Shown: positions 1 through 47,662 of the stretch, piece after piece
Numbering within the stretch: position 1 is the first letter of the stretch
Layout of the letters: every line of letters starts with the position of its first letter
Assembly (NCBI GenBank): GCA_023515725.1
Contig: JALDTO010000256.1
Span: 1-47,662 of the forward strand
Length of the DNA stretch: 47,662 nt
From: Amoeboaphelidium protococcarum X5
Taxonomy: Eukaryota; Fungi; Aphelidiomycota
Reading direction: 5' to 3'
Program-made: the position numbers and the translations under genes
Notes under the pieces: model-generated
What the model was told of the DNA's origin: nothing
The model's input: only the letters and a program-made list of their open reading frames with translations
Databases searched by the model: none

Positions 1-1112
1 ACATTGTTTGGAATCCACTCCACAAAGTAGGAGCTGTTCTTGGTCTGCACGCTCAGCATCTGCTCGTCCACCTCCTTCATGGACATCTTACCACGGAAAA
101 TGGCAGCCACAGCCAGATAACGACCATGACGCGGATCAGAGGCAGCCATCATGTTCTTGGCATCGAACATCTGCGTGGTGAGCTCGGCCACAGAAAGAGC
201 ACGGTACTGCTGAGATCCGCGACTGGTCAGAGGAGCAAATCCAACCATGAAAAAGTGCAAACGAGGGAATGGCACCATGTTCACGGCCAACTTTCTCAAA
301 TCTGCATTCAGCTGACCAGGGAAACGGATACTGGTAGTGACACCGGACATCACAGCTGACACCAGATGGTTCAGGTCACCATAAGTTGGAGTGGTCAGCT
401 TCAGGGTACGGAAGCAAATATCATACAGAGCTTCATTGTCAATACAGAAAGTCTCATCCGAGTTCTCAACCAATTGATGAACGGACAAGGTGGCATTATA
501 CGGCTCCACGACGGTATCAGACACTTTAGGCGAAGGCACAACCGAGAAAGTACACATCATACGATCTGGATATTCTTCACGAATCTTGCTGATGAGAAGA
601 GTTCCCATACCAGCACCAGTACCACCACCAAGGGAGTGAGTAATCTGGAAACCTTGCAAACAGTCACAACCTTCAGCCTCTTTACGCACAACATCCAACA
701 CAGAGTCGACTAACTCAGCACCTTCAGTGTAATGACCTTTAGCCCAATTATTACCAGCACCAGATTGACCAAAGATGAAGTTGTCTGGGCGGAATAAGTT
801 ACCGTAAGGACCAGCCCGAACAGAATCCATCGTGCCAGGTTCCAAGTCCACCAAAACAGCACGAGGAACGTACTTGCCTCCACTAGCCTCATTGAAGTAA
901 ACTACAATTAATAATAATGTTATGCAAAATGCTCATTAAGCACAAAAGAGAACATTAAGAAACTCACCGTTAATACGTTCAAGTTGCAAGTCAGAGTCTC
1001 CCTCATAACGTCCATTAGGGTCAATGCCGTGTTCGTCAGAAATAACTTCCCAGAACTTGGCACCAATCTAATTACCACACTAACCAGTCTAGAGGTGGAC
1101 AATTTCACGCAT
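1..1112 (-). CDS. TUB2: Beta-tubulin (3' end runs off the window); exons 968-1112 and 1-901, intron 902-967
   Basis: Reads MREIVHL[TAG]TG[TAG]CGN[TAG][16 protein letters not shown], then [35 protein letters not shown] and FVEWIPNN. The three TAGs sit at Q8, Q11 and Q15. The 66-nt intron is GTGAGT...TTGTAG. Confidence 0.99.
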
Positions 1113-1240
1113 TTTCGACACGAATACTTCAAAGTTGTTAAATACAGGTTCAAGATGAAGGTGAGTGAACTAACTACGTACTATACGCTGTAGTAATGAA
1201 GTAAAGAAGCTGCAACGGAGACGAAAAGAGAATCGACAAA

Positions 1241-1262
1241 GAACGAACGAACGAACGAACGA
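1241..1262. repeat. (GAAC)5 microsatellite upstream of beta-tubulin
   Basis: gaacgaacgaacgaacgaacga is directly visible. Confidence 0.85.
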
Positions 1263-1482
1263 GTGGAGTCGCGTCTTCAGTCGGCAGAAAGGAAGGAGGC
1301 GCGTCGCGTTTCACTTTACCGTTTCACATTTCATTCGATAAGAGAATTGATTACTTGACCTGTACTGTACTGTCTCGATTAAATTTAGTGATCAAGACAA
1401 CGTTAAACCTTTTAATTTTTTAATAAAAATCAACTCAATAAATAATTGCCACCCATTGTTTTACTAGTTTTGCTAATAGGCG

Positions 1483-1941
1483 TCATTCTTTATCCAAGTT
1501 TTGAGATTGCACAGACTCGGCGTCACTGAGAGTCCGTTTTCTAGATTTCACAAATGGCTCAATAATTTTAGCAATTGCATCTCTTATATTTTAATTATCA
1601 GCAATTTGTTACTTTGCCTTTTTACTATTAGCTTTAATACTAGAATCTTTTTACTACTTCTGCAACTACTATATTTTATTTGTCGTAGTCTTGTCAAAAT
1701 GGAGTCTCCACGGCTGGAGAGGTAGATCAGTGAGATGACGCGACACGACAGCGGCCGCATTAACATCGTCAAACTCCACGAAGCAGAAGTTACGCTCTGT
1801 ATTACTCACTGGATCTATGCACCCTTTAATATACTTAATTGGCCCGCATTTACGAAGCATTTGCTCCACAGCATCTTTTCCCATAATGTATGGATATTTC
1901 ACATATGCTAGACACGGTGTTTGTTCATTTTAGTCAGCCAT
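1483..1941 (-). CDS. Small RRM-domain protein, RBM25/Snu71 N-terminal RRM-like (152 aa)
   Basis: ATG 1941 to TGA 1483 is open with TAR=Gln. EQMLRKCGPIKYIKGCIDPVSNTERNFCFVEFDD resembles the RNP1 region of RBM25/Snu71-type RRMs. Confidence 0.65.
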
Positions 1942-44219: not shown

Positions 44220-44681
44220 ATGAATCCGTTTGAGAGTTATATGCTTTGTCCGTGTTGCGGAAGACCGCTGGTAAATGAGCACAACGTCGGTATTTTGAGA
44301 CGAAGAATTCTGGCCAGTGGCGCAGCTTTTGGAGTGGCAGGTGCCGCAGCGTTACCTCTGCTAGGATTTGGTTTAGGTGGCATTTCCGCAGGTAGCTTTG
44401 CAGCTTGGATATAAGGGCCAGCGATTGCCGCAGGAAGTGCTTTTGCCATACTGTAGTCTCTAGGTGCCACTGGAATGGGTATTGTTTTGTTTGGCAGCAT
44501 CGGTTCAGCAGTGGGATTGATTTTGCCATTGGCTGGCAGTTTAGGCTGGTGTACGTGCCACTCAAATACTAACGATGACTGTGCTAAGAGTAATAAGAAT
44601 ATCGTTGAAAACAATCAGCCTGACTCTAAAAAGGTTGGTGATCCTACGTGTGAAGGCTCTGATTTGAAAACTACACAGTGA
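44220..44681 (+). CDS. Ifi-6-16 (IFI27/ISG12) family small membrane protein (153 aa)
   Basis: LPLLGFGLGGISAGSFAAWI[TAA]GPAIAAGSAFAIL[TAG]SLGATG matches the ISG12 motif, including its LQSLGA. Two track ORFs join in frame. Confidence 0.85.
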
Positions 44682-44957
44682 AAACTACGCAGTAAAACCA
44701 TAATGAGAATTTGCGCTTTGAATTAACCCAGTTTAATAAAGACTTGATTTAATCAGATGCAATGTTTAAGCAAAGAGGAATTCCTCTTGTGATTTTCACT
44801 TTCATATTTTCTACAAAGTTTGCCCACCTTTTACTTTTAACGGTAGACGTTGTTTCGTTGTTTATTGATATGATGTTTATACGGCAAAATTAATGCATTC
44901 AATCTAAAACTCAATATTGTATTTGTCAAAGTATCACAGGATACACCATCATCATCA

Positions 44958-46346
44958 TCATTGAGGACAGGTTATAAGGGATGCAGACGCGTACACATTG
45001 TAATTGGTTCTGGCTCTAAATTGCACCCAATCGTCTGGAAGACTATTGATTTGCAAGTCAAAATGAACATCCATACCTACTTCATTCTTATCTGACTGGC
45101 CATTATTGAAGTAACACCACAGTCCTTCATCTGGACACTGATCTCCTATCACAACTGTGAGTTCACTGAGCGTTGATACTATCTGGCGATCAGCTTCTGG
45201 TTTCTTGCCACCATAATCTTGGTTGATGCGGCCTTTAGGTGTTATACGCCAGCAGGTGTTGCCATAATTCTTTTTCCAGTAGTTGAGACCGATAGCTGCC
45301 ACTGCCATTCCATTAATCTTACCTGGACGCCAAGCACAAGATGTCGGAGATCCAGACTTTTCGTACCACGTGATTGAAGCCTCCAAATTCGAAGCTGGAC
45401 TAGTATTAGGTTTATCTAAACATTAAGAATGCCCAAACCAATGCTAGTTACCCGATTCCTCAGCAGTGGGAAATCGTGTCTTGCCATAGCGATTAGCTTC
45501 AGTGCCATTATTGCCAGTTTACTACTATTCTGGATATGAAGGAGGATTTGGGGTAGGCACTTATGGTTGTTAGTCTTGAGGTGGCTACTCATCCGGCTTT
45601 GGGACTTATTACTATTCTTATTCTTATTATTACTGCTGTTATTATTACTCTACGCTTCCGGTTTTCTCTCCTTGTTAAACCGGCGGAGGAGTCGATGGAG
45701 CTGGGACATCAGGACTTTACTACTCTGGAACTTACTCAGGCGTAATCGGCGCAGGCTGACCATCTGGCAGATTGTTATTAGCGTCACCACCTCCATTACC
45801 AAAAAAGTTGCTGAAGAATGGAAATCCTGATAGGAAATTCATCTAAGCAGGAGGCTGAGCGACATTAGAGGATTATTATGGAGTAGGACTCGGATTCGGA
45901 GCAGTGGGTGGTAGAGGTGCCTTAGGAGACGCTGCTTTCTGTGTAGGCTGCATTTACGTATAGGAAGGCGAGTTGCCAGATGATGGCGCGCTTTAACCGG
46001 ATTGAGGCTTAGGAGGAGCAGGAGCAGGAGAAGGATTGGTAGCCGGTTGACGCGGTGTAGTGGGAGGCGGACTTGCTTTCGGCGGACATACGTACGGCCT
46101 AGGCATTTGGGCCGACCCTTTAGCAGCTGATTAACATTAATCTTCGAGACTCTGGCACTGATTACGCATGGACTCAGAGAAGGAGAGACAATTCCAGCAC
46201 TTTTGAGCAGATTGCTAGCGACATCTTTAATGGAGAGCATTATCCCAGGCACCTTGTTGCTTCTTGTTCTGATTATTTTGAGGTAGAGATTGGACTGTAC
46301 ATTACTGACTTATTAACACGGCGGATATTAAGATTTCGTATTTCAT
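44958..46346 (-). CDS. Secreted protein: Cys-rich N-module, Pro/Gln-rich stalk, C-terminal GH45-B/C or expansin-like double-psi beta-barrel (462 aa)
   Basis: Signal-like MKYEILISAVLISQQCTVQS/LP. C-domain ITWY..SCAW..VAAI..TCWRITPKG..LTVVIGDQCP..LWC..NEVGMDVHFDL..ITCP. Frame read fully open; ends in four TGA codons. Confidence 0.8.
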
Positions 46347-46655
46347 GGCTTTATATATGTGTCTTGTTAAATTGTCAAGAGAAGAGTGGTATTAGTAGGT
46401 ACTACCGTGGCACTATTAGATTTTGTGATCAGATTGGTCTGTTATAATAGGCTCTGTGGGGCACTCTGGGTTACAATTGTCACTGCGCCTGACCAAGCTG
46501 ATCACCTGAGCTTTAAGACTTTCATTGATAGTTCGACTCGACTATGGTATATATTTGGGATTCACTGATAACAGCGTAAAAGTGAAGATGGCAAGATAAA
46601 AGCTAATAAGTAAAACTAAAATATATTCATTATTGATTAGAACGTGTCAACACAA

Positions 46656-47662
46656 TCAGTAAGAAGGCTTATTCTTCTTCGCGTCCGCCTTCACATCATC
46701 CTCACAGTCCTCATCTTTAGGCTTTGGAGGTTCCTCCTCGCAGTCTTCGTCCTTTGGCTTCTAGACTGGCTTCACGGTGAGAGGAGCTGGAGCGGTGCTG
46801 TTAGCAGGCTTCACTTGAGGGGCTGGCATAGTGCTATTAGCAGGCTTGGTTGGCGCAGGCTTTGCTGGGGCTGGCATAGGAGCTGGCTTCGCTGGAGCTG
46901 GCATAGTGTTATTAGCAGGCTTTGCAGGGGCTGGCATAGGCGCTGGTTTTGCAGGAGCTGGGGCTGGCTTTGGGGCCACTGGAGCTTTCTTTGGCTCATC
47001 CTCCTCACAATCTTCATCCTTCTTGTTTTTATGCTTAGGCTTACATTCTTCGCAGTCCTTGTCATCCTTCTTGTGCTTTGGCTTTGGCTTGCAGTCTTTG
47101 CAGTCCTTGTCACCCTTGGCCTCATCTTTAGGAGGAGATGGCTTTGGCATTGGTTATGGCATCGGCATAGCAGGCTTAGTTGCATTTACAGCGGGAGTTG
47201 GAGCGACCGGTTTAGGCATAGGAGCAATTGGTTTGGTAGCTGGAGGCACAGGTGCAGCAGGCATAGTCTGATTAGCAGGAGGCATCGGTGCTACTGGCTT
47301 TGGAGCTGCAGGCATAGGCGCTGGTGGCTTAGGAGCAGCGGGCATTTAACCTGGCATTGGCTAAGGTGCTGCAGGCTTCGGGGCCGCAGGCATAGGAGCT
47401 GGTGGCATAGGGGCTGGTGGCTTTGGAGCGGCAGGCATTTGTCCAGGATTTGGCATAGGCTAAGCAGGCATAGGTTACGCTGGTTTTGGTTACGCAGGCA
47501 TAGGCTTATCAGGCATTGGCATTGGCATAGGCTGAGGTTTTGGTTAACTAGGATTAGGCATTGGCATTGGCATTGGCTACGCAGGCATCGGCTTACCTGG
47601 ACCTCCTGGACATTGGTAAGGCGGAGGCATTTAATCACGACCAGAACATGCTCTCTGACATT
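46656..47662 (-). CDS. Pro/Met/Ala-rich repetitive protein with K/D/E/C-rich blocks, probably secreted (5' end outside the window)
   Basis: Open to TGA 46656 with TAR=Gln. Repeats MPAAPKP, PMPAPAKPA, KDCKDCK and DEDCEE. Begins with a Cys motif shared with the neighbouring gene. Confidence 0.85.

What the first reader, a model, noticed from the sequence alone, without database searches (positions are those of the whole stretch)
1..47662. Non-standard genetic code across the window: TAA and TAG encode Gln, TGA is the only stop, in a fungal-lineage genome
Seen: TAG/TAA occupy invariant Gln sites in unrelated proteins. Examples are beta-tubulin Q8/Q11/Q15 (1089-1091, 1080-1082, 1068-1070), RhoGEF KPVQR (14130-14132), AGC kinase VLQVRK (19660-19662), AtuA QGKSYAQQLL (29718-29741), XPF EEQRY (38791-38793) and GDA1 GGGSTQ (40879-40881). 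Two copies of the internal repeat GQMPAAPKPPAPMP use CAA (47439-47441) and TAA (47346-47348) at the same site. All complete genes end in TGA. Established: this is translation table 6, and among fungi and their close relatives it is known from the aphelid Amoeboaphelidium protococcarum. Inference: the window comes from that species or a relative. If it comes from another fungal lineage, this is a new reassignment.
Basis: partly seen in the sequence, partly recalled or inferred. Interest (0 to 1): 0.9.

Follow-up and report, generated by a model that had tools for sequence, protein, structure and literature searches.

The report
Known stop-to-glutamine code in an aphelid
This DNA comes from the algal parasite Amoeboaphelidium protococcarum, a relative of fungi known since 2013 to read the usual stop codons UAA and UAG as glutamine, so the code change is real but not new.

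Summary
Real and already known. All ten cited sites hold in-frame TAA/TAG. The window is a GenBank contig of Amoeboaphelidium protococcarum: protein KAI3630983.1 (MIR68_010967) lies on a 47,662-bp contig and matches window exons 100% under table 6. UAR=Gln in this species was published by Karpov et al. 2013 (cited in PMC5304391, PMC6299283).

Independent tests agree. Against the duplicate copy of this region, TAR and CAR exchange at the synonymous rate: 0.086-0.096, versus 0.076-0.097 for Leu synonyms and at most 0.025 for non-synonymous pairs. The genome has tRNA genes with CUA and UUA anticodons, closest to tRNA-Gln. One eRF1 copy spells its catalytic GGQ with TAG. A spliced RNA run keeps 14 of 14 TAR codons. 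All 18 testable window genes end at a conserved TGA.

The scan's first-stage readers noted this code many times elsewhere in this genome. I confirmed an in-frame CVVM-TAA in both copies of one Ras-family gene but found no general signal.

The parts
1068..1091 (-). Beta-tubulin exon 1: three TAG codons at Q8, Q11, Q15 (gene starts at 1112; intron about 902-967; gene runs off the contig end)
   Evidence: columns 93-96% Gln in 101 homologues
6687..8964 (-). MARK/Par-1-like kinase, two exons (8964-8854, 8783-6690), ends in TGA; equals GenBank KAI3630983.1 (MIR68_010967), which has Gln at the TAR codons
   Evidence: 100% identity under code 6, 94.6-97.6% under code 1; intron spliced and TAR codons kept in RNA run X9
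14130..14132 (-).
19660..19662 (-). TAG in the protein kinase 18676-19923; TAG also in the duplicate copy (99.8% identical protein)
29718..29822 (+). 3' end of the AtuA-like gene: TAG, TAA, TAG in the cited motif, then a TAA seven codons before S-K-L-TGA (a peroxisomal-type C-terminus), in both copies
38791..38793 (+). TAG in EE-Q-RY of the 952-codon frame 36910-39765 (45 TAR codons)
39871..41703 (-). GDA1-like frame: TAG at 40879-40881, and three TAA within the last seven codons before the TGA, in both copies
47346..47441 (-). Internal Pro-rich repeat with CAA (47439-47441) and TAA (47346-47348) at the same repeat position
1..47662 (.). Whole contig C254 of the A. protococcarum MIR68 assembly; about 20 main genes in table 6; duplicated at 88-91% DNA identity on contig C146

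Best explanation
The nuclear genome of Amoeboaphelidium protococcarum uses NCBI table 6: UAA and UAG are ordinary glutamine codons and UGA is the stop. Shown by sequence: two dedicated tRNA genes, anticodon CUA and anticodon UUA (each in two copies because the genome is duplicated), 92-93% alike and closest to tRNA-Gln(UUG); TAR behaves as a synonym of CAR; mRNA keeps the codons. Inferred: these tRNAs arose from a duplicated tRNA-Gln, are charged by glutaminyl-tRNA synthetase, and outcompete an eRF1 whose stop-reading domain has drifted (I35V, T58A, S60V, R68K, L124M, L126Q, human numbering) toward weaker UAR recognition. The change is confined to this branch of aphelids and to the nucleus.
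For: Identity. Synonymous exchange between duplicate copies over 10,821 codon pairs: CAA/TAA 0.086, CAG/TAG 0.096, Leu controls 0.076 and 0.097, non-synonymous first-position C/T pairs 0-0.025, CGA/TGA 0. tRNAs: (69-72% identity to tRNA-Gln, at most 55% to other tRNAs tested). eRF1 GGQ is GGT GGT TAG in one copy and GGT GGT CAG in the other. 99 TAG, 63 TAA and 1 TGA inside 75 Ras-family matches genome-wide. RNA. Literature: PMC5304391, PMC6299283, PMC11687900.
Against: No peptide or aminoacylation data were seen. The eRF1 changes are individually mild: L123Q in yeast (human L126Q) raises read-through only to 4.4/5.4/3.4% from 2.6/2.6/2.4% (PMC4482090 Table S3) and S60 changes are tolerated in human eRF1 (PMC3632111), so a strictly UGA-only eRF1 is not shown. 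One Ras-family gene pair has CVVM-TAA in frame.
Confidence: 0.97

Rival explanations
1. Table 6 with a leak: UAA is Gln inside genes but still ends a small minority of proteins when close to the mRNA 3' end (context-dependent meaning, as known in some ciliates and Blastocrithidia). This refines the best explanation rather than replacing it.
For: Lead from s1-556692. Tested here: C-V-V-M-TAA lies in frame, 20 codons after a Ras-domain match, in both copies (C136:319132-319146 and C244:237737-237751), where another Ras pair has CVLM-TGA at 21 codons. eRF1 keeps GTS, NIKS, E55, S70 and YxCxxxF.
Against: All 18 window genes end at a shared TGA. TAA is not depleted before the stop: 4 of 200 in the last ten codons versus 91 of 4,210 at 161-400 codons. 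The AtuA-like gene reads a TAA seven codons before SKL-TGA. A CaaM-TAA pattern is not enriched genome-wide (43 versus 40 in the reversed control) while CaaM-TGA is (63 versus 20). I could not read what follows the TAA in the Ras gene.
Confidence: 0.3
2. A new, independent UAR-to-Gln reassignment in another fungal lineage.
For: None beyond the fungus-like gene set.
Against: The contig is annotated in GenBank as A. protococcarum with the same length as the window; a second gene from another contig is 100% identical to MIR68_000627 on a contig of matching length; it groups with Paraphelidium in a proteasome beta-5 tree.
Confidence: 0.01
3. TAR codons are removed from mRNA by editing or splicing, or the genes are pseudogenes or sequencing errors.
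For: None.
Against: Contigs of run X9, which show the kinase intron spliced out, carry TAR at 14 of 14 checked sites, two as TAA-to-TAG swaps. Purifying selection between copies (1,421 synonymous, 752 non-synonymous changes) and no TGA inside frames. Three other samples hold the same DNA.
Confidence: 0.01
4. TAA and TAG encode different amino acids, or one other than Gln.
For: 83 of the TAR exchanges go to non-Gln codons (Lys 21, Glu 15, Leu 14, Ser 12, Tyr 7, others).
Against: These are spread over one-step neighbours, as expected for point changes; 84 go to CAR and 36 are TAA/TAG swaps; both tRNAs share one Gln-like body. TAG is directly tested at invariant Gln columns; TAA mainly by exchange rate.
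Confidence: 0.01

Closest known systems
Amoeboaphelidium protococcarum nuclear code, UAR=Gln (Karpov et al. 2013, Protist 164:195, cited in PMC5304391, PMC6299283, PMC11687900)
   Same: Same species, same reassignment; GenBank proteins of this very contig are already translated with Gln at TAA and TAG.
   Different: Nothing in the code itself. The tRNA(CUA) and tRNA(UUA) genes and the eRF1 substitutions were not described in the papers I could read; the genome paper (Mikhailov et al. 2022, from memory) was not held, so they may be there.
NCBI translation table 6 in ciliates (Tetrahymena, Paramecium), ulvophytes, hexamitid diplomonads and oxymonads
   Same: UAA and UAG = Gln, UGA = stop, dedicated tRNA-Gln with CUA anticodon, changes at eRF1 position 126 and in TASNIKS.
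   Different: Independent origin in Holomycota; eRF1 has L126Q where UAR=Gln ciliates mostly have Phe (PMC4482090).
Context-dependent stop codes (Condylostoma, Blastocrithidia, Parduczia; PMC5304391 Fig. 4 legend)
   Same: UAR read as sense inside genes; one CaaX-TAA gene pair hints at UAA termination.
   Different: UGA is a dedicated stop here, never seen as sense; no depletion of TAA before stops in the window.
Other aphelids (Paraphelidium tribonematis and environmental relatives)
   Same: Same clade in the proteasome beta-5 tree.
   Different: Standard code: stated for Paraphelidium in PMC6299283; environmental contigs L079, L080, L083, L085, L087 have intact genes ending in TAA, TAG or TGA.

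Membership tests
NCBI translation table 6 | UAG read as Gln | tested here: met
   Invariant Gln columns in beta-tubulin, eRF1 GGQ, CAG/TAG exchange 0.096
NCBI translation table 6 | UAA read as Gln | tested here: met
   CAA/TAA exchange 0.086 and 36 TAA/TAG swaps; internal repeat; tRNA(UUA) with Gln-like body
NCBI translation table 6 | UGA is a stop and never sense | tested here: met
   No TGA among 10,821 aligned codon pairs, CGA/TGA exchange 0; 18 of 18 ends shared
NCBI translation table 6 | UGA is the only stop, genome-wide | tested here: inconclusive
   True for all window genes; one CVVM-TAA gene pair elsewhere, flank not readable
NCBI translation table 6 | Cognate tRNA genes with CUA and UUA anticodons | tested here: met
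   Two of each
NCBI translation table 6 | Gln shown in protein at TAR sites; tRNAs charged with Gln; eRF1 specificity measured | not testable with these tools
   Needs proteomics and biochemistry
Amoeboaphelidium protococcarum | Sequence identity with the deposited assembly | tested here: met
   KAI3630983.1 on a 47,662-bp contig, 100% to the window; KAI3641497.1 identical to the L019 frame, contig 389,574 bp
Amoeboaphelidium protococcarum | Genome-wide duplication | tested here: met
   Second copy of the window at 88-91%; paired eRF1, pelota, tRNAs, GTPases; described in PMC10608142
Amoeboaphelidium protococcarum | 18S rRNA match | tested here: inconclusive
   Both RF01960 searches returned an error
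Context-dependent stop codes (Condylostoma/Blastocrithidia type) | No dedicated stop codon; dual codons depleted just before gene ends | tested here: not met
   UGA is dedicated; TAA 2.0% in last ten codons versus 2.2% inside (small sample)

The most novel reading that the evidence does not exclude
The code is not pure table 6: UAA is Gln almost everywhere but still terminates a few genes (for example a Ras-family gene ending CVVM-TAA), through an only partly altered eRF1. That would be a context-dependent codon next to a dedicated UGA stop in a close relative of fungi.
Probability: 0.3. Interest if true: 0.6.

Novelty: already known. Interest (0 to 1): 0.1.

Why it matters
Practically, this genome must be read with table 6; standard ORF calling shreds three quarters of the window's coding DNA and hides genes. 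Scientifically the reassignment is a published case. The small addition here is the parts list (tRNA(CUA), tRNA(UUA), six eRF1 substitutions), which makes the mechanism testable in yeast, a far closer host for this eRF1 than for ciliate ones.

Tried and rejected
18S rRNA search of the own genome failed twice. Beta-tubulin exon 2 search was too conserved to name the species. No tRNA or Rfam hit lies in the window. The MARK kinase alignment was uninformative for TAR because its TAR codons sit in poorly conserved regions; two apparent A/K columns were intron positions of the raw frame. Proteasome beta-5 TAR sites were only weakly informative (best column 55% Gln). Frame pairs with differing 3' ends in fetched loci looked like antisense frames or, in L011/L012, a probable intron donor; none was a convincing TAA-ended gene.
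Full report
Observation. All ten cited sites are present and in frame. With standard stops the window has 9 stop-free stretches of 150 aa or more; with TGA as the only stop it fills with long frames up to 1,178 codons. Twenty main frames cover 12,086 codons, about 76% of the window, and use TAA 218, TAG 240, CAA 188 and CAG 200 times. Beta-tubulin Q8, Q11 and Q15 are TAG, in columns that are Gln in 93-96% of 101 homologues.

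Source. The window is the whole contig C254 of a 23,646,343-bp, 346-contig assembly. A stop-free piece of the proteasome beta-5 gene from another contig hit MIR68_000627 of Amoeboaphelidium protococcarum at 100%, on a contig of 389,574 bp, the length of contig C57. The full table-6 translation is identical to that GenBank protein, with Gln at its four TAR codons. For the window itself, cluster look-up gave KAI3630983.1 (MIR68_010967, A. protococcarum) on a contig of 47,662 bp. It matches window 8964-8854 and 8783-6690 at 100% under code 6. PMC10608142 lists strains X5 and FD95 and an assembly of 24,734,778 bp in 258 scaffolds, so this is the other assembly; that MIR68 is FD95 is my recollection, not checked. 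A beta-5 tree places it with Paraphelidium.

Synonymy test. The genome is duplicated, as reported in PMC10608142, and most of the window has a second copy on C146 at 88-91% identity. Over 10,821 aligned codon pairs, first-position C/T exchange rates are CAA/TAA 0.086 and CAG/TAG 0.096. The true synonyms CTA/TTA and CTG/TTG give 0.076 and 0.097; all non-synonymous pairs give 0-0.025; CGA/TGA gives 0. TAR pairs with CAR 84 times, TAA with TAG 36 times, and never with TGA. The cited KPV-Q-R site is TAG here and CAG in the other copy. Genome-wide, 75 Ras-family matches contain 99 TAG, 63 TAA and one TGA.

RNA. Run X9 shows a joint skipping 8781-8855 with splice ends, the intron of the kinase gene, so it behaves as an RNA run of a close strain (its kind is not on record). 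In two of its contigs whose differences are fully listed, 14 of 14 TAR codons are still TAR, two as TAA-to-TAG swaps. Editing or splicing does not remove them. A biofilm and a freshwater metagenome also hold this DNA.

Machinery. Among 63 scored tRNA matches are two with anticodon CUA (C158:362956-363027, C200:31431-31502) and two with UUA (C158:383536-383608, C200:16432-16504). They are 92-93% alike and closest to nuclear tRNA-Gln(UUG) at 69-72%, against 55% or less for the other tRNAs compared. ARAGORN's labels Pyl and Stop only reflect the anticodon. eRF1 occurs in two copies, both ending in TGA; the catalytic GGQ is written with TAG in one and CAG in the other. Against human eRF1 the N domain keeps GTS, E55, NIKS, S70 and YxCxxxF but has I35V, T58A, S60V, R68K, L69Q (also seen in a solved eRF1, 8ip8), L124M and L126Q. 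Position 126 tracks variant codes in ciliates (PMC4482090), but the Gln mutant in yeast is only mildly leaky (4.4/5.4/3.4% versus 2.6/2.6/2.4%) and position 60 is tolerant in human eRF1 (PMC3632111). So the tRNA step is well supported by sequence; charging and release-factor specificity are inferred.

Is TGA the only stop? All 18 window genes that could be compared end at a TGA shared with the second copy. TAA is not depleted before it (4 of 200 in the last ten codons, 91 of 4,210 further inside), and the AtuA-like gene reads a TAA seven codons before S-K-L-TGA in both copies. An earlier scan note (s1-556692) proposed that UAA also ends some proteins. I confirmed its core observation: CVVM-TAA lies in frame 20 codons after a Ras-domain match in both copies, as CVLM-TGA does for another pair. 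But a CaaM-TAA pattern is not enriched genome-wide (43 versus 40 control) while CaaM-TGA is (63 versus 20). If UAA terminates at all, it does so rarely.

Extent. Paraphelidium has the standard code (PMC6299283). Environmental contigs that fall in or near the aphelid clade have intact genes ending in TAA, TAG or TGA. The mitochondrial contig C346 ends its frames in TAA or TAG. The reassignment is therefore nuclear and narrow.

Prior knowledge. UAR=Gln in A. protococcarum is stated in PMC5304391, PMC6299283 and PMC11687900, all citing Karpov et al. 2013, and GenBank already translates this contig that way. First-stage readers of this scan reported the same code in at least eight other windows of this genome; these are not independent evidence.

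Limits. Spliced models were searched exon by exon and the joined step was left out. No protein read through a stop was sent by reference. 18S searches failed. Verdict: observation confirmed, interpretation supported, already known, interest 0.1.

Noticed in passing
G000:C136:319132-319776 (-) and C244:237104-237751 (+): Ras-family gene pair with in-frame C-V-V-M followed by TAA in both copies; possible UAA termination (same as s1-556692).
   Followed up: partly
window 3-1112: Beta-tubulin uses TAG at 3 of 4 Gln codons in exon 1 but at none of 10 in exon 2, against about 54% TAR among Gln codons in the window; possibly selection against the new codons in a highly expressed gene.
   Followed up: partly
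G000:C346 (L066-L068), 28,427 bp: Mitochondrial genome, 22.6% GC, all main frames on one strand, standard stops, only four tRNA genes found (Trp-CCA, Gln, Asn, Tyr), several intron-like frames in cox1, cox2 and cob.
   Followed up: partly
window 41927-44194 and 1-3781: These stretches have no match in the fetched part of the second copy on C146, and 3782-6271 matches a displaced position; local insertion or rearrangement between subgenomes.
   Followed up: no
window, base after the terminal TGA of 20 genes: The +4 base is T in 12, A in 5, G in 3 and never C; several genes have a second in-frame TGA right behind.
   Followed up: no
window 44958-44963 versus L073-L078 joined 47621: The expansin-like gene ends C-P-CAR-TGA here and C-P-TAA-TGA in the second copy: a TAA directly before the stop.
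   Followed up: no
L079, L080-L082, L083, L084, L085-L087: Gene-dense, intron-poor metagenome contigs of unnamed aphelid-like organisms with the standard code; useful to date the reassignment.
   Followed up: partly
G000 tRNA search: No tRNA-Gln(CUG) was among the 63 scored matches; the search scores only the best candidates, so this is not proof of absence.
   Followed up: no
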